From: Octopus sinensis
Taxonomy: Eukaryota
Direction of reading: 5' to 3'
Assembly (NCBI RefSeq): GCF_006345805.1
Contig: NC_043003.1
Span: 51,708,001-51,772,000, forward strand
DNA: 64,000 nucleotides
The number at the start of each line of letters is the position of its first letter. Within the stretch, counting starts at the first letter, position 1. The notes beneath the pieces were generated by a model. The model did not search any database. It was given only the letters and a program-made list of their open reading frames with translations, and was not told the origin of the DNA. Shown here piece by piece: positions 1 through 64,000 of this stretch. Made by a program: the position numbers and the translations under genes.

Positions 1-1318
1 CAGAACTAAGATGATGAAAAATTGGACCAAACGGGAAAAAACAAAGTTTGTCATCAAATACAGAGGCAAATTGGTAAGCCAAAATTATTTAAATCAAATA
101 AAGTAGCATATGGTGTTACAGGAAAGAAATTCTATTTCATTGGTGAATGTATTTGCAATGTAACTTTTCAAGGTGAAACGAAAAGGACAATCATTTATGT
201 GTTGAAAAAATCATTAAACCTATTTGGTACAGAATGCTTGGAGTTATACAAAATGTGGGCTACCCCCATTAGTGTGTTCTGTGAAAATGTAGTTGGCTCA
301 GTCAAAATTTTGAATGAGGTCAAGCAACTAAGACAAAAAATTAAAAAAATGTTTCCAAATGTGTTTTTGGAAGGATTAAGTTGTTGCACTAAAACAAAAG
401 CAAGGATTGCAATAAAAGAAAAGGCAACACCCGTTTTTTGGCTCAAATGGAATGTGCCATTTGCAGCATTAGACCACATAAATAAAGAGCTGGAAAGACT
501 AGAAAGTGTAAAAAAAACTGAAAATGTCAGCCATTCAGCACTGACAGTTTATGTAAAGGAAAAAATAATAAACTAAGAGTGTGTGCGAAGCCACATATTT
601 ATGGTCAGAAATGTGCCAGAAGGAATCTGATGAGTTAAAATGCGTTTAACTTCAGACTTGTCACTTTACACACTTCGATCCAAAATTGGAGACAATACTG
701 GCAACAGATGCTAGTAGGTGTCATACTTCTACACAAATGTAAAGATGGCAGTCAAAAGGCCATAGCTCATGCATTGTGGATGGTATTGACAGTGGAAAAC
801 AGTACTGGGAAGGTGAAATTACAAAGTACATAGGAAAAATAATGTACAGGTTAAAAAGCAGGAAAGGTATTGAAAAAAGATAGAAACCAATTGAAGAAGT
901 GATCCATAGAAAATGAACCAGACAGATTGGAAGAACCTGTGGAATGGCTGTATGAAACATTCCGGGTACCAACACCATTACAGGTTGTTGAACCCACATG
1001 TACAAGTGGAAGAAAAAGGAAAAACACAGAGTTCCTACAAATAAACATCAAAAAGAAAAAATATTGGAGGAGGGTGAATAAAGTAAAATTAAATTACTTA
1101 CTTCCTAAAGAAAAAAAAAACTAAAAGGGGAGATGTTGTAGTGAAAAATTGGTACACCCCTTCCCACATGACAAGTCAATTGTGTGACAGTCCAAGTCAG
1201 TCAGTAGTGGACATACAAGTAGTAACATACAAGTGGACAAGGAAACACATTATAACAAGATCACATAATTACCATTGACTAGAAATATCAATTTTATAGT
1301 GCTTTTGTAATTGTAACA
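1..1318 (+). mobile_element. Degenerate, internally deleted Ty3/Gypsy LTR retrotransposon (pol remnants, PPT, 3' LTR)
   Basis: ORF 22-576 contains KATPVF..NVPFAALDHINKELERLE (protease-RT linker). An RNase H remnant (ATDAS, KDGSQKAIAHA) lies near 705-775 and an integrase-tail remnant near 800-900. The polypurine tract AAAAGGGGAGA (1123-1133) is followed by TG...CA at 1134-1318. Confidence 0.85.
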
Positions 1319-1342
1319 TACATACATACATACATACATACA

Positions 1343-1390
<48 letters not shown>

Positions 1391-1575
1391 CTTTATTTAA
1401 AAGCAGCAGAAATTCAACAAAACATGTTACTCGGAGTTTCACGTTCCCGTTCGTCGGACAGTTTTGTTAACAGGTTTTGTTGAATTTCTGCTGCTTTTAA
1501 ATAAAGCATATTACTCTACCCCTGGTATTTGAGTACTCTTTTTTCCACCTTCTTTCACATTTATGTGTTTACTCC

Positions 1576-1579
<4 letters not shown>
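1391..1579 (-). mobile_element. Penelope-like-element-derived fold-back repeat with a hammerhead-like core (copy 1)
   Basis: Perfect 33-bp inverted repeat (1391-1423 / 1474-1506) around TGT-CCGACGA-ACG GGAA CGT-GAAA-CTC C GAG-TA-ACA; a near-identical element lies at 29092-29275. Confidence 0.7.
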
Positions 1580-1611
<32 letters not shown>

Positions 1612-1614
<3 letters not shown>

Positions 1615-1791
1615 TCATCATCATCATTTAGCGTCCGTTTTCCATGCTAGCATGGGTTGGACGGTTCTACTGGGGTCTGTGAAGCCAGAAGGCTTCATCA
1701 GGCCCAGTCAAATCTGGCAGTGTTTCTACGGCTGGATGCCCTTCCTAACGCCAACCACTCCGAGAGTGTAGTGGGTGCTTTTTACGTGCCA

Positions 1792-1795
<4 letters not shown>
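1612..1795 (-). mobile_element. SINE 3' part with (CAT)n tail; family seen many times in the window
   Basis: Shares ccatgctagcatgg and ggatgcccttcctaacgccaaccactc with copies at about 12340-12500, 18290-18440 and 36510-36660. Confidence 0.75.
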
Positions 1796-1796
<1 letters not shown>

Positions 1797-1846
<50 letters not shown>

Positions 1847-1849
1847 ATA

Positions 1850-1899
<50 letters not shown>

Positions 1900-1918
1900 A
1901 TATATGTATATATATATC

Positions 1919-1951
<33 letters not shown>

Positions 1952-2080
1952 ATATATATATGTATATATATATATATATATAATATATATAATATATATA
2001 TATGTATTATATATGTATATATATATGTATATATATATAATATATATATATGTATATATATGTATATATATATATATATG

Positions 2081-2112
<32 letters not shown>

Positions 2113-2166
2113 TATATATATGTATATATATGTATATATATATATATATATTATTATATATATATA
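1797..2166. repeat. (TA)n/(TG)n compound microsatellite
   Basis: Read directly. Similar tracts at about 3895-4168, 4370-4640, 14790-14975, 33320-33390 and 62245-62320. Confidence 0.98.
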
Positions 2167-3275
2167 TGGACTCTACCTCATAGTATAACCTATTTACAAC
2201 CAGCATAACTAGGTTACTGATACAGGTCTTCTAGGTCATTAACATATGAAAGCTTGACAAATGAAGGTCATGACCAGTTATATATACAAAGCAACCCCAT
2301 TGACAGAATGCAATAAGTTGATCATTCAGTCTCTAGGTTGGAATTCCTTTAAATTTTTCAGCAGTAGCAGTACAGGTAGCAGCAACAAAAGCAGTTGTAG
2401 CAGCAGCAAACAACAGCAACAGCAGCTGCCGCTTTCAAGTTTGTTATTCTTCTTGAATAACTTGCCATGGTTTAGGTAATAACTGTAGGAATTCAAAGAA
2501 TTTATAATTTTGTCAGTGCCATTGATGACTGATCACTTAATACAACTGTGAATGCTTTATCACTTCCACAATTATTTTACTCTCTCCTCTTATATTGGAT
2601 ATTTTTACATTCAGTTTACTTACAAGGCAAAGAGTTTTTATGTCCATTTTCAGTGGAATGAATCTCCTAATGATTGAATATTACGAAGGAATAATAAAAA
2701 TCACATTCATGAATTTCCTTCAGACTGTGATTATTTCCAAATGCTCATTTCATAAAATGTTTAATTAATAAGTCACAGGTTATGCCATGCTGATGATTTC
2801 TAAGAAGAATGAAATAGTGCTTACATAATTACCATTGACTAGAAATTCTAAGAACTTTGTAATAGGTAAACAAAAACAAAAATTAAATATGCGAAACTTA
2901 TGCATCTTTTTCCTTACAATTCCTTAATTTCAATTTCAAATTTCTAAGCCGGTTTTAAATTATTTCAAGGGAGATAATCATATGGAGAAATGATTATCTC
3001 CTTTGTAATAGCTGTGACTATTAGAAGGACCACATAAGTAAAATAGAAATGTAATGTCAAAAGTATTGTATATCATTAGTACACATTACAGTATGGGCAG
3101 CATATTTAATTGGAGCTGAATTTCTTTTATTCGAAACATCGATATTCCAGTTCATTACAGAAAATATAACAGAAGATTCTAATTCTTCAATTGCATGTAA
3201 CACGGACAACACCAGGTATCTCTGCTTGGAAAGTGGCTGTTAAGTTAATAATGATGATGATGATGATATCTAACT

Positions 3276-3712: not shown

Positions 3713-3956
3713 TAATAATAATCCTTTCTACTAAAGGCATGAGGCCTGAAAAATGGGGTAGGTGACTAGTCGATTATATCAACCCCAGTTTTTCACTGGT
3801 ACCTATTTTCACTGAAAGGAAGAAAGGCAAAATCAACCTCAGCGGAATTTTGAATTCAGAATCTAAAGATAAATGTAATGATGCCTGGTGTGCTAATATA
3901 TACATACATGTATGCATATATGCATACATACACGTGCGTGTGTGTGCATATATATA

Positions 3957-3991
<35 letters not shown>

Positions 3992-4000
3992 TACATATAC

Positions 4001-4032
<32 letters not shown>

Positions 4033-4059
4033 CTATATATATATACATATCATACATAT

Positions 4060-4145
<86 letters not shown>

Positions 4146-4272
4146 TATATATATATGCATATATACATAGGAAGGAAAAATTATAAAGAGGCAGAATGCT
4201 AAATTGAAGGTAAATTTTAATGAAAATGGGTGTATGGAAAATTAAAAAAAAATTTTTTTTAAATATTAACTC

Positions 4273-4330
4273 AAAAATATGGAACGCTTCATGAATTTGC
4301 GTGTCATCCTTGCGCAGGGGCCATGCTAAT

Positions 4331-4361
<31 letters not shown>

Positions 4362-4369
4362 ACTGCCGA
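4273..4369 (-). pseudogene. U6: U6 snRNA pseudogene (5'-truncated)
   Basis: The reverse complement matches U6 from TCGGCAG to CCATATTTTT. It lacks the first roughly 9 nt, has a 1-nt deletion in ACAGAGAAGATTAGC and a CG>CA change, and has only (TA)n upstream. Confidence 0.9.
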
Positions 4370-4380
4370 TGTATATTATA

Positions 4381-4421
<41 letters not shown>

Positions 4422-4482
4422 TATTTACATATTTTTCTTTCTTAAATGACTACAACCATGTGTAAACAGATCTGATACCTTT

Positions 4483-4515
<33 letters not shown>

Positions 4516-4538
4516 GCATACATATATATATATATATG

Positions 4539-4595
<57 letters not shown>

Positions 4596-4664
4596 TATAC
4601 ATATATATATACATATATATATATAATATATATATATATATACATAACACCTATCTGTGTTCAT

Positions 4665-5790: not shown

Positions 5791-8569
5791 ATATGCACTG
5801 GAGGTTTGCATAATAAAATTTATGCTAATATTAATATCATAATGAAACAAAGAGTTGTATTGCAACATTATATAGTAAACTGAGAATTCCTGTTTCGCGC
5901 CTTACGGTTATTAAACTTCCAAGTCTCAGTTTTAACTCATGGGAATGCCATTTTTGTTTGCAGTAAAGAGTTTTGCCAGCATAACATGGCAGTCCTGGTT
6001 TAGGACGAATGTTGCTATAATTTAGCCCCAGGAGGCATCACCTCCAGCTGGCTATATGACATGATCTGTGTCCTTATATTTTTTAACAAGGGAATCTAGT
6101 ACCCCCACTCAGCTCAAAACAATATCTGTGTATTGCGATTTCTAGGTTATTTTCCTTCATCAGCACAGAATAATTGTTCGGCTAGAGGTGGCGCTGGTTT
6201 CTACACACAAACAATACACACACACACATACGATGGGTCTCTTCCAGTTTCCATCTACCAAATCCACTGCTCGGCCCGAGGCTATAGCAGAAGATACTTG
6301 CCCAAGGTGCCATGCAGTGGAACTGAGCCTGGAACCATGTGGTTGGTAAATAAGCTACTTACTACACACCCACTCCTGCACCCATATATACATTAAAGTA
6401 ATAAAGTTAATGTCCGGTCATAGAGTAAACAATGGTTTCCTATTCATGAATGCCATAGCTTTGTGGACAACTCATCAGACTTTAGTCTGAAGATAAATTT
6501 AACTCTTCCCCTCTCAGAGGTGAAAACTTTTTATGGTCAATAGTCAAAAGGTCAATAGAGAATAAAAGGTCCAGCAATAGTGAGGACAGGTTATCCTCCC
6601 TAGACCAGCTATTTGGAGATGGAGAATAAGGGATCTATCCTTTGGCCTGCTTATGAATCATAAGGACTCTTCCAAGCTTAGCTAGCAAATGGGGAATTCC
6701 ATGTTTGCAGCAGGTAGCACTTGAAATGGATGCTTGACGTGAAGATTTCTTGGTAAGTATTCAGCAACCCAGGTCTCCAAGTCTCAGGGAGTTTTTAAGC
6801 ATCCTAGCTTGCTCAGCTATGCAGAGCTTGCAGTATCTGCTCCAACCATTCTAAGATCTTCCACTTAAAATTTTACGGAGTCCCTTGATCTTTCAGGTGC
6901 CACACATGGTTTCCACAGATGTGATGAATCATCTTTCTGGGACCATGAAAGAGGACCTGTGACTGTACAAGCATCACTTGAATGCTGTACTGGATGATCC
7001 AATGTATTTCTAGTCATGGGTGTTGGCTGTGTTCATGTTATTGGTGCATCTCTGATTGACTCCAGGCCTGGGAATGTTGCTATTGCCACTTGTGTTGTTG
7101 GGGCTATCATCTGTGCTGCGATCATTATGATGTGTGAGTCCAGCAATATGGCTGTGGCTGCAGTCACTGTGGTTGTTATCGTTGTAGTTGTACATGGCTA
7201 TAGGATTGGCACTATTGCTGCCAGTGATGTGGGTGCCATCAGTGATGGGGGTACTGTCGATGGTAATGTTTGGTGTGGGGTTGGTAGATTCACTAATGTA
7301 ATGGTGTTGGCATGGTCATCTTCTCTGGCTGTAATGCTTGCACTGGGGCTGTTTGTGTCAGTGCTGGTGTTTCCACTGCTGTCACGGCCTCCGATGCCGT
7401 TGATGTTGCTGAATGATCTGTTGCTGCTATTACTGTGGTTGCCATGCTTGGATGTCACCACAGCTTCATAGATGACACCCTTGGCCTTGCATTGGCCTCA
7501 CACTGGACAGTCATTGTACACTCTGCAAGAGCAGCCTGCCTCTTCCCATATTTTATATATAATATATATGTAGAACCTGGTCAAATCGTCTAACCCATGC
7601 TAGCATGGAAAACGGACATTAAATGATGATGATGTATACATACATGAACACACACACACACACATTGTTCTTCTATCAGTTACTGTCGATTAAATCCACT
7701 CACAAGGCTTTATTCACCCTGGGACTACTTACCCAAAGAGCCATGAAGTGGGACTATACCTGAGACCATATAGTTAGGAAGCCAGCTTCTTAAACATGGA
7801 GACACACCTATGTGTATAAAATTAGATCAGTACAAATTTTTTTCTTTCTTGCTCGACAAGAAATTTTGTTTCTGTAGCATAATGTTATTTCATATTGCTT
7901 TATAAAGAAGAAATAAAAAGGTAAAAAAAACAGGTCATTCAAACATTCCTCCTACACAAGGTTTGGTGACATCAATTGTTTGCAAAACTCATGTCAATGT
8001 TACACCTTACCTTTCTGTTCATGATGTGTTAAATCCGTCATTCATTAAAACTTCTACCTCCTTAAACTTTCACCTTTTCTCTTGTCCATTACATAACTAC
8101 CATTATCTAAATGTCGTTATTGTTTACAATATTACAACGATTTTCTAGAGATTTTTGTGGTAAGCAAAATTTGAGCATTCATGTTTCCTTTCTCTTTTTC
8201 TTTTTTCTCCTTTGTATATTCACATTCTTATATTATGTCTGGATTTCAGAATATTTAATGGATTACCATTGTTATTTCCTGTGCTAGCAACATGTAACAC
8301 AAATTTCTTGAATAGCCAACAGCTTACATTAAAAACTTCTATTTCTCAAACAAACAAAGGTACCTTTGTATGATTACTGAACTAGCTAGAGATAGAGATT
8401 AAAGCTCTCTTAAATCACACCATATACTTGCCTAATAAAGTAAGGACATATGTTCTGTAGAACAAGATGCATTATATAGGAACAAAGGCTTAGCTGATCA
8501 CTGAAATGCTATGTAAAATAGGCATACTTGATTACAAGAGACCAAGGGCGAATGAAAGGGGAAGAGAGC

Positions 8570-13930: not shown

Positions 13931-14878
13931 AACTTAAATAACAAAGAACAGCAGATTTAAAATCAAATTTTTAAAAAACAACAAAAACAGTTTATTTCTT
14001 TAACAATCTTTATTTCATTTTCACATTTTCTTTCATTATTTTCCACAAATTTTGATGTTTTATATTTTCGTTTTTTTAATATATCATTTATATATTTATA
14101 ATATTTACAGATAAATAAATAGATTGTTCAATACATTCGACAACTATGGTCACTATACAGGGAACACAACCATTGCAGACAGCTTGCTTCCTAACAGGAC
14201 AAATCCTGCGATGATTAATCCTTCCAAATATGGTAACTATTATACCAGTATATACACACACATATGCATATATGTATATATATATATATACACACACACA
14301 AACATACACATGTAAGCTACATATATATGTAACACACACGTGTAAATGTATATATATGTGTGTGTATATATATATATATATTCACACACACACACATATA
14401 TAAAGTACACATGTGTGTATGTATTAATGATGGTTATCAATAAAATATTAACAAAAATGATGATGTAATGATATACCCGTAGAAAACAGAAAAAAATGGT
14501 TTTCTATTTAATTCATAAAAAAATAATCTTTAAATTTATATACACACTTGCATATATAAATGTGTGTTTATTGATATATGAATGACTGCATTTGTATTTG
14601 TGTGTGTATCTATGACAATATTGTATATCAGTTTTTGATATGTACGTGTGTGTGTGTGTGTGTTGTGTGTTTATATATACATATATGTATGTACATATTT
14701 ATAAATATATAATACATCCACATACAGACACACACAAATATTTATATATATAGCTATACAGATACACATATTGTGTGTAAGTATATAAGTTTGTATGTGT
14801 GTGTGTGTGTATATATATATATATACACACACACACATACGTGTATATATATATATATATACATACATGTATATATAT

Positions 14879-14957
<79 letters not shown>

Positions 14958-17900
14958 CATATATATATATATATTTGTCAATATAACATATATCAGAAAA
15001 AGAAACACTCTAAAGAATAGAGCAGTAAGTATTAAACAAAGTTTAAGTCAGGTCATAGCGTGACCAATGGTTTCATATCGACGAAAGCTATAGGCTGTAG
15101 CTTTCGTGGATACAAAACCACTGATCACTCTATGGCCAGACTTTAACTTTGTTTTATATATATATATAAGGTGTGTGTTGTAAGAGTGTATGTGCATAAT
15201 TATGCTGTGAGTGTGTGTGCATGTGCACTATGTACATGCATACACAAATGCAATCCCCAGAAAAAAAAAATGCCTGCATATGTGTTTATCTTAGTCTGTC
15301 ATTAAACCTCAGGGCAACTGCAACAGCAGAAAAAAAAAGTTTAAAATATGAAATAATAAAGAAGCATGGATAGGGTGCATTTTTTTTGTATAACAAATAC
15401 TTTGTAAATACCTCCACCTTAAGGGACTTGAAAAATTTAAAACAAATTCTTAAAGAATTGCATCTATTCTACTGTATTGAATTAATGTTCTGATATAATT
15501 AGGCCAATACCCCCACAACAAAGCAAGCCAACAAGAGAGGGAAAGTGACTCTAATTACTAAACCCGCAATAAATTCCAGTCAGATGTTTCTCTTAAATTA
15601 CATCCCTGTGGCTTAAAAAAGAATGGATGCATTGGATAATGTAGCCCTAGAAACACTATACTCAATCATTCCACCACCACAAAAAGGTAAAAAGCCAAAT
15701 AGTCACAGCTAGAACATGTTTACTTGTAGGCATGCTCAATTGGAGCTGACCTGGTGCTAAACAATAACATTTTCACCATCGATGCCACTCCTAATCTGAG
15801 GGGCAAGAGATGTGCATGTAAGTGATCTGAACAAAGCTGGACCCATTATTTTATTTGGCATCCTGGATAATCAAACATCTGCAAGAAAGCAGCTTTCAGC
15901 TAGCCCCCATGATCGTCCTCAACATGGCCAACAAGACACAACAGAAACAACCATTTGGTAACATGAAATAATGAAGAAAATGTGACACAGAGACAGTGTC
16001 AAATATTTAGTTAAAAAGAACATTTTGTTCATTATTATTCACTGACCAGCTGAGTTGCCCCGTTCTTAATGTCAGGGTTTACAGCTACCTCTACCCCAGT
16101 TTCTGACTTTTGCCCTTCAACAGACAAACTGTTGAGCCAGTATTTCATACGAAAGAAACAAAGAAAATCAAGATGCAAATAAATAAATATATACATAGAA
16201 GAGCAGCAAACAGTTGCTAATTGCAGCAATGTTGTTGTCTTGTAGCTAACTGCACTGCAGTGAGACAGGTGAAAGCAGGAAGTCTTTTGAGCACCACACA
16301 TATGCAATCTGTCTAGTGTTGCAGTAAGAATCTAAATTATTCCACCCATTAACAAAAGAACAACTATAATTCTTTCCCTCCATCCCATTTTAAGGTTTGT
16401 TGAAAATAAATTTTTAAATAAATATTGCTTTTATTCTTCAGTCTTAGGGAGGTGTGAAAAAAAAAAAAAAAATTCAGAAGGAATTGATAAATACAAATTC
16501 TTTAAACAGGCAAATAAAAGCAAGGAAGTTGTTTACATATGCATTGCAATGCCTGAAATTGTTTGAGAGTTGAATTCTCATGAAAATAAAGCCTTGCAGT
16601 TGCTACTACATCTTCTCCAGAATGATGATAAATAATGGTAAAATTAGTAGATGAATCCCAACAACGAATATTGCACTGCTATATCTGATATTTTCCTTAT
16701 ATGCAGAACAATTGTACTTTCTGGAACATGATGTTGCGGTTGTTTTTATTGTTGTAGATTAATGAAATCGAAGTTGAAATATTGAGGTTTGACAGCTTCA
16801 GATACTGGTAGTATAATTTGTAATGAATGTAGGTTGGTGAGTGTCACATAGTGTAGTATGGTGTGGTGAGATGAACTGTAACATTATTTTATAGTTGTGT
16901 TGTATGTCTGTATCACTGCATAGTATAGTGATGTCTTTAAAGCATAATGTAGAAGTATAGCGATTGCATTTTAATGCACTGAATAATTCCAGTGGCCCAT
17001 AACAATAAAGTGCAATGTGATGCTGTGTGGTGCACAGTTTTAAATTGTTGTCATAATGTTTGGTTTTGGAAGGAAGTTCCTTTCCACCTTAAGGCCACAA
17101 CATGTATTGGTTGCTTGAATTGTTTCATTTGTAATAGTAAGTTCTTTTGTGTGACATTTCATAGAGGTAAGAATATGATGATGATGATTTTGATGATTAT
17201 GATGATGAGAATGATATTGATAATGACAATGATATACTGCACCAGTTTTGTTGTGGTTGTTGTTAAGGAAGATACAAACTATGAATTTACAGTGCATTAC
17301 TTGTTGTACAGATGCCCTTAACACCATCAATGTCTGTAGTTTAGTCTTATAATAACCCTCCAGCAATGTCTGCATTGTTGTCATATATTTTCATTCTCTG
17401 TACTGTGGGTAGTAGTCCACTCACAAATGGTGTCTGTACGCTTTTATTGAAACACTCCAATTGTAGAGTTTATATGATAGGAGAACACACCACTATTGTC
17501 TGTTCAATGGGAATACTCCTCTGCTACCTGCATTGTTGTCGAATAACCCACCACCAGTGGCTGTACTCTTGCTGAACACTCCACTATCAGTGGCTGTTCA
17601 ATTATCGAACACTACACTTCCACCAGAATTTATTTTACTGTTGACGAATACTCCAATCCCAGTTCTTCATCTGAAGATTGAATGTGTTGGCCTTTCTCAA
17701 TGCACATTCCAACCTATCTTGCACAAAGGATAAGTGCCTTCCACCGTATGCTGACCATTTTGCCCAAGAAGGTCTTGGTCATTATCACATGACTGGTAAA
17801 CAGCTCTAAGCAGAAGTTAAATCTCTGTGATGGTTGATAAAGTTAAATAACAGGGATGAGAGGGTTGATGGCAGTAGTTAGAAATTGAAGTTCAATAATC

Positions 17901-29507: not shown

Positions 29508-32500
29508 GTATGTGTGCAGGTATGGTGTTTGCAAAGTAGTTGATTGATCTTGCTTCATTCTATTCATGAAGTACAAAATCTTAATTTTTTTCTTTTTAAA
29601 CAAATGAGAGTGGAGCTGCACAGTTAAGGTACTGTGCACTTTTTGAGCACATGTGCATGCACAACTTCAGATCTTGCTATTGCTGTTATGCTGTGCTCCT
29701 GAGCAAACCATTTAACTCTGCTGAGTAAGTTTGCCTGATTGAAACTTTCACATAATATGGATGATTAATGGAAGAATGTCACCCATCTGGTTGTAAAAAT
29801 AATTGATCTAACAGATATTTTATCTTACTCATGCAAGTATAAGAAAATAGTTGTTAATACAATTTGGTAAAACAAGAACACCTAATGAAATTTATGACTG
29901 CCTTCATAGTCAGATTCTGCCAAATTTCCATTACAGGGCTTTGATGAAGCTAAGATTATAACCAGAGACACTTGCCAAAGTTGTCATGCAGTGGAACTAA
30001 ACCCATATCGAAAACCAAAACCACACAGTTGTAAAACAAACCTCTTAACTATGCAGTCATACATGTGTTGTAAACATACAAAGGACTGAACCAAAAAGGA
30101 GATCTATATAGAAATGTCAGGATCTAGCCATCCTGACCAATGAGTAAGGGACAGGACACTGTCATGAAAAGCAGGTCATTAGAGAAATGTAGAAATACTT
30201 ATATATTTATTAACCTTTGTCACAGCAAAGAAGTTGTAAAATCCAAAATATTTGGATTTTGCTTCCAAGAAGTTGTACTCGGCCGTTCCATGTGGCACAA
30301 TGTCTGTGAGTTCTAAGCCGTCTTCCACAAGTGTGATGCCATAAATGCCAATGAGTGTGATAATCAAAAATACTACAATAGTGAAAACCTGGAAATAAAG
30401 AAATATGTATGATATAAAGGACATATGGACAATAGCATCAGTCTTTCATCATCCCAATTCTAAATATAAATCAATGAAAAAATTTAGGTTTCCATAAAAT
30501 ATTGCAGAAATTTTTAATTGTAAATTATAACATATTGATTGCTCTTTCTCATTATATGCTCACTACATTAAGTGTGTTAGTACTCACGGTTGATCTGAAA
30601 CTAAGCAATAACAAACACAAAGATCATAACAATTGGTGTGTCTGGAAAGTTTGTGCCGATTTTTAAAGGAAAGAAAAAGGTCAATAAATACTTGCCATTA
30701 CATTTTTAATCAACCAAATATGAACCATTTTGTTGCACAATGTGTCTCTATCTTTCCTTTAACATGAAAATACCCTCTTCCCAGAATTGAGATGGTTTCA
30801 TAGCAAAGAATTCATCAAGGTATCTTTTTACATCATCCAAGGAATTGAAATTTTTACCATTAAGACTATTCTGCAGAGACCTGAATAAGTGGAAATCTGA
30901 AGGAGCAATATCTGGTGAATATGGAGGGTGGGGTAACATATCCCAGTCGAGCTGCAGTAAATTTTGTCTGGTTCCCAAAGCATCAAGTGCTGAAAACGAA
31001 CTTTCTTATCTTCCATTTTAAAGGGTTACAGAATTAACACAGGTTATAGGAACATAAACCTTCTTCCACGAAAAGATAGCTTAAACTGTGCTCTAAATGG
31101 AAGTGTAGTAAAATCCTATTTTATGGAGTCAACCATGTTCTAAAATAAGTCGAAAGGTAAGCTACTATAAATCGGCACAAACTTTCCAGACAACCCAATA
31201 TCAGAAACAGTTATGGAAAGCAACAACAAATGTCACTTGTGTTGCTAAACCCACCTTTGTTGGTGTCTTCTGTAGAAATGGCCCGTAATGATTCTTAACA
31301 ATATTTGCTAACGAGAAGTTGAAGCATTCATGCTGCATCTGTAGCCAACAATCTTTGAATGAGACAGTGTCAATTGGTGTCAAACACTGACGAGACGATG
31401 TATTGGATGGACATGCTGCAAACAGAAATTGAAGAATGAGGTTATGGTCTCCACTGAAAATTTCCTTTCATCTTTCACAAATAATAATTTCACTGTTCAA
31501 TCTACAGACAGATACACACATACAAAGGAAGAATATGTACACACACACACACAATCATCATTTTAACATCCATTTTTCCAAGCTTGCATGGATCAAGTAG
31601 AATTCATTGAACCAGAGTTTCTACAACTGGATGCCCTGAAATATATAAAAATAAATTCAGGCTTACCTGGAGGATATACAGGATTTTGAATTGGTGGTTT
31701 TTCAGTGAGTACTGACTTGAGTGAATTATCTGGAAACAGGACTTTCAGAGGTTTATCAGAAACAAGGAGTTTTGGAGATTTTTCAGGAAGAATGGCTCTT
31801 GGATATTTTTCTGGAACAAGGGCATTTGAAGGTTTTCCTGGAACAAGGGCATTTGTAGGATTTTCTGGAACAAGGACACATGGAGATTTTTCTGGAACAA
31901 GGGCATTTGGAGTTTTTTCTGAGACAAGGGGCTTTTCTGGAGCAGGGGTCTTTTGAGGTTTTTCTGGAACAAGTGCCTTTGAATGTTTTTCTGGAACAGG
32001 GGCCTTTTGTGTTTTTTCTGAATGTACTGGCTTTGTTGAGTGGCTTTGATTGACAACACGTTCTGTTGGCTGCATTGCTAAACAGGTGACTGGCTGAGAG
32101 CCATTAACAGAAATTTTAGTTACGGTCTGATGAATAGCAACACTTGATGAGGTATTTGGGATGCTCAGGTGTGTTGAAGTGAAACCAAAATGTGATAAAC
32201 TGTGTTCACTGTCCCTTTGTGGTTGTAATTCTATCACTTGGTTGGCCATAGAACTGTTGGAAAGAAAATTTGGTTTATGAATCTTGGTATAATAATGTTT
32301 TCTACAGAATTATTCTGATTTGTCACATTTTTTCGTTATTATGGTTTAGTTTAGGGGCAGGCAGGATTAACCCTTCCGTTACTGTATTTATTTTTAGATG
32401 CTTTGTTTTTCTCTCAATTATTTTAAATATAACAAAGAATTTAGCAAAACAACTTAGTTATCATTAAGCTAGTGTTAGGAACATTAATTGTGACTAAGTG

Positions 32501-33313
32501 TTGGTGAAAGATTTTAATTCAAACCTTATGAAAATAAAACATTTGTACTACAGAGCCAGAGGCGGTTTAAACCAGGTTGGTATCGAAAGGGTTAAGCAGA
32601 TCTAATCAACAATCTTACTTTGCGTTGTATGCGCACACCTAAATTATTCAATGTGTGCTTCTTTTCTAAGATGTGACCTGAGGGAGATATAGTTACTATT
32701 TCTAGCAGGGTGAACAATTATGTAAATGCATGTTGCTTTTAATTAAAATCTTAATGCTTCAAATAGGTGACATAAAGCTTGTAATAATATAAAATAACTG
32801 TTTTGAAACTCAGTAATTTAAGCAAAGTTGTTTATAGAAAGAAAGAGAGAAAGAGTGGAGGAAGAAAAATACCTTTGGAAACAACAGAATACATCAATTC
32901 GTTTATCTTCACGCCGAACTAAATCCCAACTAACAACTGCAGGCAGGATCAGAAGGATAGAACTAAGATTGAAGAACACAAGAATTGCAGCCTGAAATAA
33001 ACAATTGTTGAAATATAGTATGACATAATATGCACAATAGTTTATGGTAGTACATGGCAAAAATGGACATGAAATGGTGACATGAAGTTGAATGTTGGGG
33101 GGGGGGGGAGAGAGAGACGTATACTCCTTGCTATTTTGATAGGAATATACATTTCATATAAATTTTAAAAAGATTTAGTACAGGAAACCACATGGTTTCG
33201 GGTTGTCCCACTTTGTAGCATCTTGGGCAAGTGTCTTCTAGAATAGTCCCAAGCTGACCAATGCTTTGTGAGTCAATTTGATTGATGGAAACTGTGTGGA
33301 AACACATCGTATA

Positions 33314-33392
<79 letters not shown>

Positions 33393-54530: not shown

Positions 54531-57119
54531 CTGTAAAAATAAATTAATTGTTAGCATAAGCGTTATGAATCCCCTCCCCTCAAAAAAAAAAAAAACCTCT
54601 TGTATTGTAGAAGAATCTTATTTACCAAGAAATAAGGGTACAAATGAGCCAAATGGCAGCTTCTAAGCAATGATTGGATCTACAAGAAATAGATATCTAG
54701 AAAAGAAAAAAAAGGGGGTCTGTGTGTGGTGGTGGTGGTGGGGTACATAGGGTAATACAGTTCTAGAGAAAGAGAGTCAGTGATATGGATGTGATGCTTT
54801 TGATCAGGTCTACTCAACCAGAGCTAACTTAGGGTTAAACAATGATAAACAACCATGCACTGATTGTGATCATTAAATATATTGTTTATTTTTGTCTTTA
54901 CTACTGTCTTACATCTATGTTTCAATGTTTGCTTGGGCCAAATGGCTTTTTCTGATGGGAAAGCTGGAAGCTCTTCCAACTATCTGTTCAACAATGAAAT
55001 ATTTGTGTAGGGTACCTATGGAAGAGGTAGACCTAGGAAGACATGGGATGAAGTGGTGAAATATCATCTTCAGATTTTGAGTTTTACGGAGGCAATATCA
55101 GTGACCGAGACTGTGGGCAATTTGCTGTACTTGAGAAGATTAGTGAAATTGTAGTCATGGCCAGTGTTGGTGACACATAAAAGGCACTTGTGCCATTTTA
55201 TATGTTAAAGGCACCCAGTTCACTCAGTGGAGTGGTTAGCATTAAGAAGGGCATCCAGCTGTAGAAACCAAACCAAAACAGACAGGAACCTGGTGCAGCA
55301 CTCCGACTAGCATCGGAAATAGATGTTAAACAACGATGAGGTAGCCATTGAAAAAGTCAGGTTAATAGATATTGACATACAGACAGACAAAAAGAAATCC
55401 AACACATTCTCTTTGTTATATATTTCCGCAATGAAATACTGAGAAACATTGGTATAGATATTATAAATTAATGGTGCAGGCATCATTGGTGAAAAGGATG
55501 TTGCTGTTGTAGTTGTTTAAGGGCCAGGTCAGATTCCATCAAGTCAGTCTGTGCATTCCTTTTATTTGCTTCAGTTGTTTGACTGTGGCCATGCTGGAGC
55601 ACTGCCTTGAAAGGCTTTAGTCGAACAAATCGACCTCAGGATTTATTTTTTAAGCCTAGTACTTATTCTATCAGTCTCTTTTACTAATCCACTAAGTTAC
55701 AGGGATGTCAACACACCAACACTGGTTATCAAGTGGTGATGGGGGGGGGGCACAAACAGACACAAAGACACATACACATATATAATATATATATATATGA
55801 CAGGCTTCTTTCAGTTTCCATCTACCAAATCCACTCACAAGGTCTTTTTGGGCCCAAGGCTATAGTAGAAGACACTTGACCAAAGTGGGACTGAACCCAG
55901 AACCATGTGGTTGGGAAGCAAGCTTCTTACCACACTGCCATGCTTGCACCTATATGCCCAAAAATGTTCCATCACATCACTTTTTCCCCAGACACAGTAA
56001 AGATGTTTAGCAGTGATCTGAAACAGACATGGTTAATATTTCTAGAAAATGGACCAACTGCATAGCAGTTCACTTTGTAAAAGAAGTGTTCTGGGTCAGA
56101 GCAGATGGGTGCTTGTAGAAGGATAGATATAGGTATCTCTCTATCCATATGTATCCACAAACACGTGCACACACACACAGAGTAGAGAATGCACTTAGAA
56201 AAACTGGTAGAGTAGTGGTGAACATTGTAAAATGATGATGTATTGTATGCAGACTCATAACCCATTGGATAGATTTCAAAGATACCCTGAACAGAAAAAA
56301 AACAAAACAAAACATATATATAAAAAAAAAAAACAGATGTTAAAATCGTGATAATAACGATGATGATGATAGAATTCCTCAAAAATAAAAATGCAATTTG
56401 GCTTTAGAAGATGTAGTTTATTTTCTGTACTTTTTTTCTTTTCTTTTGCACTCAGTAACAAACTGGTCAGATGTTCTCATCGCTAGGGAAATGTAAGTGG
56501 TGCTATTAGCAGACAATGTTTAACAGTATAGATAATAGACAGAGACAGGAGCCTGTTTCTAATGAAATGCAGTTAAAGAGATAAACCATCTACACCACAT
56601 GGCTACCATCTGGGAGTATTTATAACTTTATAAAATAGAGGTATAAAAGTTAGGTATGTCCATAACCTTTGTAATGCAGCGTAAACAACTTATAAACTTT
56701 ATTATACAGTATAATACAGAAGAGCAACTAAGCTTAGAATGATATGTTGTGAATTATAACATGTGTTGTGAATGTTGATATTGTTGTTGTTTGTTTTAAT
56801 AAAGGGAATAATTAACCATTTTGTGAGTGACAGTTGTAGCTGATCTAACGTTCTATTCCAGAAACCAATCTTCAAAGATTGTTTGGAATATTTATCTATT
56901 AAGGATACACACAGATCAAATAAAGAAATTTAAACATCAACTGCTTGATCTCTTTTACTCTTTTACTTATTTCAGTCATTTGACTGCGGCCATGCTGGAG
57001 CACCGCCTTTAGTCGAGCACATCGATCCCCAGAACTTATTCTTTGTAAGCCTAGTACTTATTCTTTTGCTGAACCGCTAAATTACGGGGATCTAAATACA
57101 CCAGCATCGGTTATCAAGC

Positions 57120-57335
57120 GATGTTTGGGGGGACAAACACAAACACATATATATATATATACATATATACGACAGGCTTCTTTCAGTTTCTGTCTACCAA
57201 ATCCACTCACAAGGCTTTGGTCGGCCCGAGGCTATAGTAGAAGACACTTGCCCAAGGTGCCATGCAGTGGGACTGAACCCAGAACCATGTGGTTGGTAAG
57301 CAAGCTACTTACCACACAGCCACTCCTGCGCCTCT
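57120..57335. mobile_element. SINE (representative of an abundant family)
   Basis: ccaaatccactcacaaggctttggtcggcccgaggctatagtagaagacacttgcccaaggtgcc. Copies at about 6200-6390, 43300-43440, 55790-55950, 58470-58620 and 62560-62730. Confidence 0.8.
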
Positions 57336-60300
57336 ATGTAACTAGTGATAACTTGTATTTGAATGATTAGCTTTTAAGGATTTGAAGGTTGAAAAAAATG
57401 AGTGCATTTATGACTACACATTTCTAAATGTGTGGCCACAGCGTGGTTGAATGGTTAAGAAGTTCTCTTTGCAATATGAAGTCTGGAGTTCATTCCCACT
57501 GTGTGGTGTCCTGGGCAAGTGGCTTTTGGCCATTAGTTGATCCATATAATATGAGTGAAATTAAGATAGACGAAAACTGTGCAGAAGCTTATTACATGGA
57601 TTGTATCTGTAATTCAAAAGATCCAACCATATGACACACTAACAGTGACTCTACCCGAGGGCTATAAAGGGACCAGTGTCTTTGGAATACTCAGCCACTT
57701 ACACACAGACTGATTTGATGGAGCAACAATAACAAGGCTTAGAAAATACTAACGAATCTAATGAGGTACATTAATACAAATAAATTACAGTATCAATATC
57801 AACAATGCACTATCGATCAGATCACTAAGATGCTCTCTCAATGTTCTAGATTGAAGTATTTGTTCAGGCTCTTTACATTCCGAGTTCAAATCTTGCTATG
57901 GTCAATATTGACTTCCATCATTCTGGGAATCGATAAAACAACAGCAGTTGACATGGTCATGTCAATAAAATAGGTATCAGTTATACGCTCAAGTCGAATT
58001 CATTCAATCTAATTCTCAATTCCCAAAGTAAAATCAACGTAAACACAAAATTTGTATTTTGGTTCGTTGCATTTGTACTTAAATGCACTTCCTGCGCTTG
58101 ATCTCATGTAAACCTAACTCTGCTTTTCCTATGGCTTCGTTACTCGGTGGTGGTGATAGAGTAGTACCGCTGAATTCTAAACGATTGGCGAATAGAGTTA
58201 TCTCCCTTAAAGCTCGGCGAATATAGCGACACATCCCTGTACTCATTACTCTCTCCCTCTCTCACATACACACACAATGTCCTTAATCTTTTGTTCCACT
58301 CAATAGTCGACGGCCAAGCTTGGGCACCACAATGAAAAGTTTTAGTGGGACAAATCGATCCCAGTACTATTTTGAAGTCTGATACTTATTCTATCGATTT
58401 CTCTTTTGTCGAACTGCTAGTTTACGGGAACGCAAATAAACCAATACTGGTTATCAAACGACGGACCACACACACACAACAGGCTTTCACACAGTTTCGT
58501 TTACCGAATTCATTCATAAGGCATTGGTCAACCAGGGGCTATAGTATAAGACGCTTGCTCAATGTGTCGCGAGTGAGCTGAACTCGAAACCACATGGTTG
58601 CGAAGTAAGCTTCTTAACCAATGCATGCATGCACGTAAAAGAGATAGATAGATAAACAAAGAGGGAAAGCGAAAGAGATAGAGAGAGAGAGAGGAAGAAA
58701 GAAAAAGAGGGGAGGCTAGGACGGAATGGTTCAAATACAATCGGTATGAAAGATCAATTTGATACCGATAATATGACAATGGAATAATGCGTTGTCGTTG
58801 CTTTTCTGATTGCTGCAACCGCAATTAAATAAATAAAGAGCCGAGAGCGACCACACTGAATTTTCAGATTATGTGGCAATACGAGTTTAAGGAAAATGAC
58901 AAATTGCATTCTGGTTCCGTCCATACCTTTCCCAAGCACGAAAACAGATAAGTAGATGAGCGAAAATAACGATACATGAAAACAAAATCACAGTAATATA
59001 TACACAATGCTATTAATATGTACACGATTCAACAAATTACACGTTAGAGAAGAAAAAAAAAGTCTCGTTCTAATCAGTATTCCCCACCTCCAAGAAATCA
59101 GTATTCTATTGAAATTTCCATGTTTTTTAATTTTTTTTTCTTTGGATTCGTTAAGTGAAATGGACTAGTGTGAAGTGGGATACTTGAAAGCGCGATGCGA
59201 TGTCAACTTCTTGTATTAAACCATACCATGCCTTGTGGAACTCATATTACTGAAACTATTAAACCGAGACTATTATCGAGTTAGGGTTGTCTTGAACACT
59301 CGAGTTTTCAAATTTTAAAAATCGTAGATGATTTTTTCAGATAACCGTAGTTGTTGCATAAACTCCTTCATATATTTCATATTGGTCAGTTCAGAATCAA
59401 TAAAGGTATGAACCAGAATATTAATCAGCATGTATCAATCGGCAAAGAAACTATTTTTCATAATGACCAAGAGACCGTTCAAGTTAAAAACCCTACAACC
59501 AAACTAGAAAGCTTCCTACATGGTCGCTGATCTGCTTAAAATTTCCTCAACATATGCTACATACAATGCTAAATAAAAGCATGCTATGGTGTGTGTGTGT
59601 GGGGGGGGGGAGGTTAGACAAGATGCTTTTGGTCATGGGTTTTCTGGATCAGGATTGATCTGGAGCGAAACAATAGCAGCAACAACACTAACTCCACATC
59701 AGTCAGTATTGCCAAATATTTTGAGATGTTAACTTTTTTTTTTTTAAATATACATAATTCCAATATACAATTGAGAATCGCAAATTCTAATGAGGTGCAT
59801 TGAAAGGAATTGGTTTAAGAGTGAATGGCAATAAACGAAAGTATTTATGAATCAACTCCATTTGTCAAGGTTATTTCTAAAGATTTTCTATAGAAATTAT
59901 AACTGATTTGTAGAGATAACCTTAACAAGTGACGTGATGACACTGCTAACACAGTAGGACACAGTATTGACTTATAAAAGCATTTAATATACTTTGTAGT
60001 ATATTATGATTGCATAACAAAATACAATGTCCCTACACGTCTCTTATTTCTTTACATTACTTTACAATGTCCATACACGTCATGAAACAACTTATGCATG
60101 AGACGGATTCCTAACGCCATCAATTCATTCAGAGAATTTTCAACGACACATCGATGTTCTTATTTAGCCTCCATCTCAGCCTTGGCCAGACTGACATAAT
60201 TACAAACGTTCACAATTTTTTTGTTTGTTTTGTTTTTGTATAGCAAAGACTAGATTATCCATTGAATTACTTTTTCTTGGAGCAGTAGGTGAGAAGTAAT

Positions 60301-62314: not shown

Positions 62315-64000
62315 TATATATATGTATGTATGTTTTGCTTGTGGCCATTAGGCCGACGAGGCCAGGTTACCAGATAATCGGTCACTGGACTGCGACCATC
62401 GTGGAGTACTATTTTGAAGCATTTAGTCGAACAAATCGACCCCAGAACTTTTTTTTTAAAACCTGATCGGCCTCATTTGTCGAGTCTCTGTTGCAGGGAC
62501 GTTAACAAACCAAAACCGGTTGTCAAGCGGCGGTGAGGGGCGGGGGCATACAGAAATAAATATACATACGGCGGTCTTCTTTCAGTCTCCGTCTATCAAA
62601 TATCACTCACAAACCTTTGGTCGGCCCGGGACTATAGAAGATACTTGCCAAAGGTGCAACGTAGCAGGACTGAACCTGGAACCTTGTGGTTGGAAAACAA
62701 GCTTACCACACAGCCACGCATGTGCCTACACACACACACACACACACACACAAGTACATATATGAACAAGTGCGTACGTCTGCTAGATGTCATCTACATA
62801 AGTTTAGTACCTCACCACCAACTGTGCGATTGAATAGGCCGGCCTATGATGATTAGAGGCAACAGTTTTTCTCTGAACGGTAATTATCTAATGTGCTTCC
62901 CACTTTTTAAGACATTAAGGTATGGTTTGGAGAAGATTTTGGTTATTCTTTCAACGTAGACGCGCACAGAACAGCGACCCAAGAAGGGAGCCTTCATATG
63001 CTTGTCCGACCTTTCAAAAATAGCAGCCAAATTTTCATTCCGTTATTTTTTTACACATTGGATTCTGTAGTCTTGGAAAATAAAATGGCTGGGGGGTTTT
63101 GATCACAGGCCTGATAGATTAGAGCAATTTATGCTCCCTTGGATTCTAGTATAGTTTTTATTTATATTAGGAACATAGAAACTAAACCTTAGTACCTGAC
63201 CAAAATTTTACAGATTCAAGTGTTGCCAAATGAAGAGTGCAGTGATTGTTAAAGTAACTAGTGAATTACCGCAAGACCATGTCAACGAGGAGTACTGTGT
63301 AGAATGTATAATAAATGGACGAGAGAACATTTATAAATTTAATGTGTTATTTTTTTCGTTCTTTCCTTTCTTTCATCTCAACCCTTTCCCTTCAAGCGAG
63401 CCCCACTCCGCCTCGTCTTCAATTGACATTGTAAACTAAGATAGGAAAAGCGTGGTATTATAGAGAGAAACGAGGAGGGACAAGGCAGAGACAGATAGAC
63501 AGATAGATAGATAGTTAGATAGATAGATAGATAGATAAAGAGAGCGAGACAGTGACTATGTTTATTTTGTTGTAGTGATTAGACCGTGATGGAGAAGGAA
63601 ATCTTGTGTGTTCTTTCAGGGAGGTCCTGGGGCAAACTTGAAAGAGAAATCCGTTGAATATATGAAGTTTAGTATGAGAGGAGCAGAAGATGGTGGAAGC
63701 GAAGGATACGGTGGCGATGGTGGTAGCCGGCCTGCTTGATGGTTCTTAGGGCCCAATGGAAGACAGAAGATCGACTTTCAAGTCTAAGCTTACAAAATAT
63801 ATAAGAGTGAAATAGTACGCATGCCATGCGTAAATGTAGTAGTCGTAGTATTATCAGTAACGTAGTGAAAAAAAAGGTTTACTATAAAATAGCGTGCGAG
63901 TATGTACGTAGAAAGATTCTCTCTCACGTGTGTGGCGTAGCTTTTTTTTTCTTCTTTCTTTTTTTTTTTTAACCTCTCCGCCACCACTTACTACATATTC

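What the first reader, a model, noticed from the sequence alone, without database searches (positions are those of the whole stretch)
31692..32033. Roughly 13-copy 9-aa 'xALVPEKxP' tandem repeat inside the Patched cytoplasmic middle loop
Seen in the sequence: a 27-bp periodic array encoding about 114 aa ([54 protein letters not shown] ...). It stays in frame inside a 587-nt exon whose phases join both flanking Patched exons. Known: the TM6-TM7 loop is a regulatory region, and I know of no such repeat in fly or vertebrate Patched. Inference: a lineage-specific disordered K/P/E-rich module, reminiscent of titin PEVK or neurofilament KSP tails. It could act as an array of ubiquitin-acceptor lysines or S/T-P phosphosites (EKSP, EKTP) and so tune receptor turnover.
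Basis: partly seen in the sequence, partly recalled or inferred. Interest (0 to 1): 0.75.

Follow-up and report, generated by a model that had tools for sequence, protein, structure and literature searches.

The report
Octopus Patched loop coding minisatellite
An in-frame 27-base tandem repeat really does lengthen the flexible cytoplasmic middle loop of the octopus Hedgehog receptor Patched; it is an octopod-specific expansion of a kind common in disordered protein regions, and nothing yet shows that it changes signalling.

Summary
On the minus strand, window 32033..31692 holds 13 tandem units of 27 nt (one pair shortened to 21+24 nt). They lie in frame inside the 587-nt exon 32253..31667 of Patched. 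Exons spliced from the window reproduce residues 302-1427 of the Octopus sinensis RefSeq protein exactly. The array is residues 675-788, in the TM6-TM7 cytoplasmic loop, which AlphaFold2 predicts as coil and which has no counterpart in solved PTCH1 structures.

The array is octopod-specific. Argonauta has 7 degenerate units in an orthologous 443-nt exon. A non-octopod cephalopod transcript has one unit. Other molluscs have none.

The array evolves at two speeds. The old flanking units are under purifying selection (omega about 0.16). The young central units change fast by substitutions and in-frame indels.

The best reading is a coding minisatellite expanded in a hypervariable, disordered spacer of the loop. 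A specific function is possible but unshown. The S/T-P phosphosite idea is weakened, because Argonauta has none. Teleost PTCH1 has its own tandem repeat (4x PPxY) in this loop, so loop repeats are not unique to octopods.

A side finding may matter more: cephalopod Patched lacks the loop PPxY motifs found in the other molluscs examined.

The parts
31667..32253 (-). Patched middle-loop exon, 587 nt (phase 2 in, phase 1 out), encoding residues 602-796 of O. sinensis XP_029639053.1
   Evidence: Splice sites and phases. The spliced translation is an exact substring of P0124. The orthologous 443-nt exon in Argonauta (L001 62424..62866) has the same phases.
31692..32033 (-). 27-nt (9-aa) tandem array, 13 units, 114 aa (residues 675-788)
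31953..32033 (-). Old 5' units U1-U3 ([27 protein letters not shown]), with orthologues in Argonauta
31773..31952 (-). Young central units U4-U10, up to 26 of 27 nt identical to each other. Absent from Argonauta. Every substitution and indel separating O. sinensis from O. bimaculoides within the array falls in U3-U10.
31692..31772 (-). Old 3' units U11-U13 ([27 protein letters not shown]), conserved in Argonauta mainly through synonymous change
32076..32141 (-). Conserved loop motif [22 protein letters not shown], just upstream of the array (pan-lophotrochozoan HQTVT..G..VT.LA)
   Evidence: Alignment A1. AlphaFold2 draws a weak hairpin here.
32145..32213 (-). [23 protein letters not shown], the position where other molluscs carry 1-3 PPxY motifs. 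No PPxY here.
32873..32991 (-). Upstream exon encoding TM6 and ...[14 protein letters not shown]
31255..31415 (-). Downstream exon encoding the conserved [11 protein letters not shown] motif and the pre-TM7 segment
30215..30388 (-). Exon encoding TM7 and the start of extracellular domain 2

Best explanation
The feature is a coding minisatellite. A 27-bp unit encoding K-x-x-x-P-(D/E)-K-x-x was duplicated in tandem, by replication slippage or unequal exchange, inside the constitutive exon for the cytoplasmic TM6-TM7 middle loop of octopod Patched.

Shown:
- The array sits at the loop's hypervariable spot, between two conserved motifs (HQTVT..G..VT.LA and CPSTTSSRQCL).
- That stretch is predicted to be coil, and the same loop is unresolved in human PTCH1.
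- Growth was stepwise: one unit in a non-octopod cephalopod, about 7 degenerate units in Argonauta, and 13 in Octopus.
- The central Octopus units are young and still changing by in-frame indels and apparent unit-to-unit copying.

Inferred: the array acts mainly as a tolerated, proline-rich, Lys/Glu-charged flexible spacer that lengthens the tether between the two halves of the transporter. The older flanking units have acquired, or always had, some sequence-specific constraint. No defined signalling role is shown.
For: - Identity and placement: the spliced window equals O. sinensis Patched residues 302-1427. Solved mouse PTCH1 aligns to residues 24-621 and 799-1363 only. AlphaFold2 with a 48-sequence alignment gives pLDDT below 50 and coil for draft residues 296-513, which are residues 597-814. 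Human loop residues F614-T728 are unresolved by cryo-EM (PMC6750913).
- Hypervariable site: alignment A1. The TM6-to-TM7 segment is 125-279 aa across 121 Patched proteins, and the Octopus proteins are the longest. Teleosts carry unrelated low-complexity sequence at the same spot.
- Stepwise growth.
- Minisatellite behaviour: O. bimaculoides differs by indels of +3 and -2 aa, and its unit 3 is a copy of unit 2. Young units share up to 26 of 27 nt.
- Not a dispersed element or a shared domain.
- Relaxed but real constraint: omega is 0.16 in aligned units against 0.039 for the rest of the protein, Fisher p = 1.5e-7. Amino-acid divergence between O. sinensis and O. bimaculoides is 6.2% in the array against 1.0% elsewhere.
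Against: - Purifying selection on the old units (pN 0.16 vs pS 0.59) shows that their sequence matters, which a pure spacer does not predict.
- Among the young units, 14 of 15 inferred changes are nonsynonymous (one-sided p = 0.069). This could be diversifying selection rather than drift.
- Cephalopods lack the loop PPxY motifs, so a new loop module could have a compensating role.
- No transcript reads, proteomics or functional data for Octopus were available.
Confidence: 0.6

Rival explanations
1. The array is a functional multivalent module for receptor turnover or trafficking. It would provide lysines as ubiquitin acceptors, or a repeated docking motif for an adaptor or E3 ligase, and would compensate for the loss of the loop PPxY motifs that recruit HECT E3 ligases in other animals.
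For: - Every non-cephalopod mollusc and nemertean examined has 1-3 PPxY motifs in the loop. Cephalopods have none in the loop or the C-tail.
- The loop PPXY is a known Smurf/HECT degradation signal (PMC4080449; PMC6750913).
- Lysines are retained: 18 in Octopus and 13 in Argonauta.
- The old units are under purifying selection.
Against: - The non-octopod cephalopod also lacks PPxY and has no array, so the loss and the gain are not coupled in time.
- PxxP and S/T-P motifs are not conserved between Octopus and Argonauta.
- No known motif family matches the array.
- Nothing here tests ubiquitination.
Confidence: 0.2
2. The array is a phospho-regulated set of proline-directed Ser/Thr sites (EKSP, EKTP), like neurofilament KSP tails.
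For: O. sinensis has four S/T-P sites in the array and O. bimaculoides has five in the array plus its tail. Both KSP and both KTP sites are conserved between these two species.
Against: - Argonauta has no S/T-P site in its array.
- The sites sit at the most variable unit positions, 8 and 9.
- Only 2 KSP sites are present, against dozens in NF-H (from general knowledge).
Confidence: 0.07
3. The array is a PEVK-like entropic spring with a mechanical role between the two halves of the transporter.
For: P+E+V+K make up 55% of the array, with 20% proline. The array is predicted to be coil.
Against: - There is no match to the titin PPAK/PEVK model or to any Pfam family at E up to 1, apart from one chance-level PARM hit (E 0.55).
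- Loop length varies from 125 to 279 aa across functional Patched proteins.
- Cryo-EM constructs with a shortened loop still fold.
- No mechanical load on this loop is known.
Confidence: 0.03
4. The array is an artefact. Either the segment is intronic or mis-annotated, or the repeat number is an assembly error.
For: No Octopus transcript reads could be inspected directly. All Octopus proteins used here are gene-model predictions.
Against: - Independent assemblies of O. sinensis and O. vulgaris give the same loop sequence, and O. bimaculoides gives a near-identical one.
- The exon length is 3n+2 and the exon carries conserved loop motifs, so it must be included for TM7-12 to be read in frame.
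- Argonauta has an orthologous exon with the same phases.
- Two RNA-seq assemblies of a non-octopod cephalopod contain the homologous loop region in a mature, intron-free transcript.
Confidence: 0.03

Closest known systems
In-frame coding minisatellites (tandem repeats in intrinsically disordered protein regions)
   Same: - The unit is 27 bp and the copies lie head to tail in frame.
- Copy number and indels differ between related species.
- Young, similar central copies are flanked by old, degenerate ones.
- The array lies in a predicted disordered segment.
   Different: Polymorphism within a species has not been shown. O. sinensis and O. vulgaris are identical here.
Teleost PTCH1 middle-loop repeat: 4x (S/T)PPPSY(R/H/S), plus an N/S-rich tract
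   Same: It is in the same protein and the same cytoplasmic loop. It is also a lineage-specific tandem amplification of a short peptide, with low-complexity sequence at the same hypervariable site.
   Different: The teleost unit is 7 aa and is the known PPxY ligand of WW domains. The octopod unit is 9 aa, has no known motif, and lies downstream of the PPxY position.
Titin PEVK region (PPAK motifs)
   Same: Similar composition, rich in Pro, Glu, Val and Lys. Both are expected to be extended and disordered.
   Different: No profile match. The unit is 9 aa rather than about 28 aa. The array is 114 aa in a membrane-receptor loop, not a sarcomeric spring.
Neurofilament-H/M KSP repeat tails
   Same: Lys-Ser-Pro and Lys-Thr-Pro occur within a K/E/P-rich repeat.
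   Different: Only 4 S/T-P sites are present and none in Argonauta. They sit at variable unit positions. The protein context is unrelated.
Human and mouse PTCH1 middle loop (intracellular loop 3)
   Same: Same topological position. Both are unresolved or disordered. The conserved flanking motifs (VIQ/VIE..PQ upstream; S(T/S)SxR..L and HYAPFL downstream) align.
   Different: The mammalian loop carries a PPXY motif (residues 642-645) and no K/P/E array. The octopus loop has the array and no PPxY.

Membership tests
Patched (PTCH, RND-type sterol transporter and Hedgehog receptor) | Full-length similarity to PTCH1, including the sterol-sensing domain and 12 TM helices in two halves | tested here: met
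   phmmer against PDB PTCH1 gives E = 0, with residues 24-621 and 799-1363 aligned. Pfam Sterol-sensing scores 6e-36 and Patched 4e-25. The sequence is identical to RefSeq 'protein patched homolog 1' of O. sinensis.
Patched | The repeat lies in the cytoplasmic loop between TM6 and TM7 | tested here: met
   In the AlphaFold2 model the TM6 helix ends at draft residue 288 and helices resume at 515. The array is draft residues 374-487. It falls in the unaligned gap 622-798 relative to the mouse structure.
Coding minisatellite (in-frame tandem repeat) | Head-to-tail units of 10-60 bp, more than chance would give | tested here: met
   TRF scores 194 and 113. Spacing is 27 nt. 0 of 100 shuffles reach the observed matches.
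Coding minisatellite (in-frame tandem repeat) | Copy number or unit content differs between related genomes while the frame is kept | tested here: met
   13 units in Octopus, 7 in Argonauta and 1 in P0003. O. bimaculoides differs by +3 aa and -2 aa. The exon lengths of 587 and 443 nt are both 3n+2.
Coding minisatellite (in-frame tandem repeat) | Length polymorphism within a species | not testable with these tools
   Only one sequence per species is available. O. vulgaris and O. sinensis are identical in the loop.
Titin PEVK / PPAK repeat | Match to the PPAK motif profile; units of about 28 aa | tested here: not met
   hmmscan against Pfam at E up to 1 finds only a chance-level PARM hit (E 0.55). 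The unit is 9 aa.
Neurofilament KSP repeat | Many reiterated K-S-P tripeptides, conserved as phospho-acceptors | tested here: not met
   2 KSP and 2 KTP in Octopus, 0 S/T-P in Argonauta.
PPxY (WW-domain ligand) loop motif of Patched | [PL]PxY in the middle loop | tested here: not met
   None is found in the loop or C-tail of Octopus, Argonauta or P0003. Other molluscs and nemerteans have 1-3, and teleosts have 4.
Intrinsically disordered region | No confident predicted structure; composition typical of disorder | tested here: met
   pLDDT is about 30 with no secondary structure across the array. Proline is 20%. The charge-hydropathy value is only borderline: 0.427 against a boundary of 0.435.

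The most novel reading that the evidence does not exclude
Cephalopod Patched lost the canonical PPxY degradation signals in its middle loop. In octopods a new, selectively maintained K/P/E repeat array then took over, or re-tuned, control of receptor turnover or trafficking. On this reading, repeat number would act as an evolvable dial on Hedgehog responsiveness in a lineage with unusual limb and brain development.
Probability: 0.12. Interest if true: 0.6.

Novelty: new member of a known kind. Interest (0 to 1): 0.3.

Why it matters
Patched turnover sets the range and sensitivity of Hedgehog signalling. Its cytoplasmic loop is where one known degradation signal (PPXY) sits.

The array shows that the loop tolerates, and in octopods keeps, more than 100 extra residues. 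It also gives a dated series (1, 7 and 13 units) for how such inserts grow.

Taken alone, this is an ordinary case of repeat expansion in a disordered linker. The more useful lead is the cephalopod-wide absence of loop PPxY motifs. That raises a testable question: how is Patched down-regulated in these animals?

Tried and rejected
- Searching 5.8 billion proteins with the exon peptide alone (194 aa) gave no hit at E up to 0.01. No other protein of comparable length (107-340 aa) shares the repeat, and no fragments from other octopods were found.
- A 435-aa query spanning TM5 to extracellular domain 2 found no further cephalopod fragments.
- DNA for O. bimaculoides and for the O. sinensis record could not be fetched, because the gene range exceeds 100 kb or the protein is not on record. 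No Octopus-to-Octopus dN/dS was therefore possible.
- Pfam gave no family for the array.
- A transposable-element or exonisation origin is rejected. The unit occurs nowhere else in the window, and degenerate orthologous units exist in Argonauta.
- An RNA-structure or editing-substrate idea is not supported. The array RNA folds no better than shuffles, z = +1.44.
- Alternative splicing that removes the array has no in-frame route. There is no in-frame internal acceptor, and the only in-frame GT..AG pair (32238/32093) is weak and lies outside the array.
- Literature searches found nothing on repeats in cephalopod Patched, and the species behind SRR8281693 and SRR29271472 could not be identified.
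Full report
**Observation.**
The gene is on the minus strand. Read that way, window 32033..31692 is a head-to-tail array with a 27-nt period.
- Tandem Repeats Finder reports period 27 at 31771-31930 (5.9 copies, 80% matches) and at 31933-32020 (3.3 copies, 77%).
- The repeat finder gives start-to-start spacings of 27,27,27,27,27,72,27 across 31703-32034. The single 72 reflects one pair of units shortened to 21+24 nt.
- The peptide units are [105 protein letters not shown] and KSVLTEKPP, 114 aa in all.
- The consensus 27-mer and its 14-nt core occur far more often than in shuffles. Apart from three 2-mismatch matches to the core, they occur only here in the 64-kb window.

The outer units are recognisable mainly as peptide.

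**Gene and exon.**
- The array lies in a 587-nt exon, 32253..31667, with acceptor ccaacag|TT and donor CCAG|gtaagc.
- The upstream exon (32991..32873, TM6...[14 protein letters not shown]) ends in phase 2. The downstream exon (31415..31255, [12 protein letters not shown]...) starts by completing a phase-1 codon. The frame is therefore continuous.
- Joining 21 exons chosen from splice signals alone gave a 1126-aa protein. It is an exact substring, residues 302-1427, of Octopus sinensis 'protein patched homolog 1 isoform X1' (XP_029639053.1, P0124).
- O. vulgaris differs at one residue outside the loop. O. bimaculoides is 98% identical overall.
- All five full or near-full annotated isoforms in the three Octopus species contain the exon.
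- Because 587 = 3n+2, skipping the exon would put TM7-12 out of frame.
- No internal acceptor in the exon is in frame with the upstream exon. The only in-frame internal GT..AG pair is weak and lies outside the array.
- I could not inspect Octopus RNA-seq reads, so transcript inclusion rests on these arguments and on the public gene models.

**Position in the protein.**
- phmmer against all PDB chains aligns residues 24-621 and 799-1363 to mouse and human PTCH1. Residues 622-798 are left unmatched.
- AlphaFold2, run on the window-encoded protein with a 48-sequence alignment, ends the TM6 helix at draft residue 288 and resumes helices at 515. Draft residues 296-513 (residues 597-814) have pLDDT below 50, about 30 across the array. 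They show no secondary structure apart from a weak hairpin in the conserved [16 protein letters not shown] motif.
- In human PTCH1 the same loop, F614-T728, is unresolved by cryo-EM (PMC6750913).
- The array is 20% Pro, 16% Lys, 11% Leu, 10.5% Val and 9% Glu. Its charge-hydropathy value is only borderline: 0.427 against a boundary of 0.435.

**Distribution.**
- Among 495 Patched relatives found with the loop region, only three clusters cover more than the conserved flanks: Octopus, Argonauta hians (P0002) and an unnamed transcript assembled from two RNA-seq runs (P0003; L002 and L003).
- P0003 is 79% identical to the Octopus protein, against at most 61% for any other mollusc. I take it to be a non-octopod cephalopod, probably a decapodiform. 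The species could not be identified.
- Argonauta has an orthologous exon of 443 nt with the same phases (L001 62424..62866). It holds seven degenerate units: [55 protein letters not shown] and KAVLAEQPP. TRF no longer detects these as repeats.
- P0003 has a single unit, KGTNPDKTL (AAA GGA ACA AAT CCA GAT AAA ACA CTT), followed by unrelated P/S/Q-rich sequence.
- Gastropods, bivalves, a chiton, nemerteans and teleosts have nothing comparable.
- In alignment A1 the array fills a gap between two motifs conserved across Lophotrochozoa, HQTVT..G..VT.LA and CPSTTSSRQCL.
- The segment from the end of TM6 to the DGL(D/E)LTDIVP motif just after TM7 is 125-279 aa across 121 proteins (median 170). The Octopus proteins are the longest.
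- The exon peptide alone finds no other protein among 5.8 billion, and no Pfam family matches the array.

The module is octopod-specific and grew in steps of 1, about 7 and 13 units.

Tandem repeats in this loop are not unique to octopods. Teleost PTCH1 proteins carry four head-to-tail copies of (S/T)PPPSY(R/H/S), and in my simple periodicity scan they score higher than the octopus array. They also have about 100 aa of N/S-rich low-complexity sequence at the same hypervariable site. The loop is a recurrent site of lineage-specific repeat growth. What is new here is the K/P/E 9-mer, not the phenomenon.

**How it evolves.**
- Octopus against Argonauta (Nei-Gojobori):

| Region | dN | dS | omega |
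|---|---|---|---|
| Aligned repeat units, 63 codons | 0.189 | 1.165 | 0.16 |
| Non-repeat part of the same exon | 0.134 | 1.510 | 0.089 |
| Rest of the protein | 0.042 | 1.083 | 0.039 |

  For the repeat units, the excess of synonymous over nonsynonymous change is significant (Fisher p = 1.5e-7).
- Five hand-paired units give the same picture, pS 0.59 against pN 0.16. For example, KVLFPDNSL and KVLVPDNSL differ by five synonymous changes and one nonsynonymous change.
- The old flanking units are therefore constrained as peptide, about four times less tightly than the rest of the protein. Two caveats apply: dS is near saturation, and aligning repeats can inflate identity.
- The central Octopus units U6-U10 share up to 26 of 27 nt. 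Of the 15 changes inferred from their consensus, 14 are nonsynonymous (pN 0.255, pS 0.057). At unit positions 1, 8 and 9, pN is 0.46 and pS is 0. The one-sided binomial p is only 0.069.
- Between O. sinensis and O. bimaculoides, all 7 substitutions and both in-frame indels (+3 aa, -2 aa) fall in units 3-10. Unit 3 of O. bimaculoides is an exact copy of unit 2, which suggests conversion or re-duplication.
- Amino-acid divergence between these two species is 6.2% in the array against 1.0% elsewhere.

This two-speed pattern, with old constrained edges and a young unstable centre, is typical of minisatellite growth. Whether the centre is drifting or diversifying cannot be settled without more DNA.

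**Mechanism.**
- *Shown:* an in-frame tandem array, predicted to be disordered, lies at a hypervariable site of the loop and was expanded in octopods.
- *Inferred as most likely:* the array arose by slippage or unequal exchange. It persists because this part of the tether between the two halves of the transporter tolerates extra length. It behaves as a flexible, proline-rich, charged spacer.
- *Against a pure spacer:* the constraint on the old units shows that at least KPVHSEK.., KALVPEK.. and KVL(F/V)PDNSLK(S/A)VL(T/A)E(K/Q)PP have sequence-dependent value.

- S/T-P sites number 4-5 in Octopus and 0 in Argonauta. They sit at the most variable unit positions.
- PxxP motifs are likewise absent from the Argonauta array.
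- Lysines are retained, 18 against 13. This is compatible with, but does not demonstrate, a ubiquitin-acceptor role.
- The PEVK and KSP comparisons hold for composition only.

**A side finding that may matter more.**
- In human PTCH1 a PPXY motif in this loop (residues 642-645) and one in the C-tail recruit HECT E3 ligases and drive degradation (PMC4080449; PMC6750913).
- Every non-cephalopod mollusc and nemertean examined has 1-3 [PL]PxY motifs at the aligned loop position.
- Octopus, Argonauta and P0003 have none in the loop or the C-tail. P0003 keeps degenerate SPPYS and IPYS. Octopods have SLSHFGF and SIPNTSS, window 32213..32145.
- The loss predates the array, because P0003 lacks both. 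The two events are therefore not tightly coupled.
- It still leaves open how cephalopod Patched is turned over. It also gives the 'turnover module' reading of the array a concrete, testable form. I rate that reading at about 0.1-0.2.

**Verdict.**
It is speculative about function, and its phosphosite idea is contradicted by Argonauta. The feature is a new example of a well-known kind, a coding minisatellite in a disordered loop. The protein is already annotated, and no paper in the library describes the repeat. Interest is modest.

Noticed in passing
window 32145-32213 (-); proteins P0124, P0002, P0003 compared with P0004-P0039: Cephalopod Patched has no [PL]PxY motif in the middle loop or the C-tail. 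Every other mollusc and nemertean examined has 1-3 in the loop. These motifs are known HECT-E3 degradation signals in mammals.
   Followed up: partly
P0047, P0051, P0070, P0060, P0118 (teleost PTCH1), middle loop: Four tandem 7-aa units, (S/T)PPPSY(R/H/S), amplify the PPxY motif. About 100 aa of N/S-rich low-complexity sequence lies at the same hypervariable site as the octopus array.
   Followed up: partly
window 31773-31907 (-), units U6-U10: Among the young units, 14 of 15 inferred nucleotide changes are nonsynonymous. At unit positions 1, 8 and 9, pN is 0.46 and pS is 0. This is suggestive of diversification but not significant (p = 0.069).
   Followed up: partly
window 31810, 31837, 31864, 31891, 31936 (-): Each central unit contains YYCTTGTTCCAG|A, which looks like a 3' splice acceptor. 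All are out of frame with the upstream exon, so using them would break the reading frame.
   Followed up: partly
window 56990-57380, 55589-55956, 6205-6390, 62548-62727, 33186-33332 and 8 more places: A dispersed element of about 200-390 bp has 13 copies in the window at 70-87% identity, on both strands. One copy lies in the intron just upstream of the repeat exon. It looks like a SINE.
   Followed up: partly
window 30751-31005 (-): An intronic open frame (...[18 protein letters not shown]...) resembles, from memory, the C-terminal part of a mariner-type transposase. A Pfam scan at E up to 0.01 found nothing.
   Followed up: partly
P0123 (O. vulgaris CAI9725751.1, 1455 aa): An alternative annotated isoform has a different, longer C-terminal end (...DSDGKIFMQNIILTNQ...). 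It looks like read-through into an intron in place of the last splice.
   Followed up: no
window 1280-2230, 3770-4650, 14090-15060 and elsewhere: Long TA/CA-type microsatellite tracts give spurious '[12 protein letters not shown]' open frames on both strands, in the introns and flanks of the gene.
   Followed up: no
window 32076-32141 (-); draft residues 343-358: AlphaFold2 draws a small, low-confidence beta-hairpin in the conserved loop motif [22 protein letters not shown]. It is the only secondary structure predicted in the loop.
   Followed up: no
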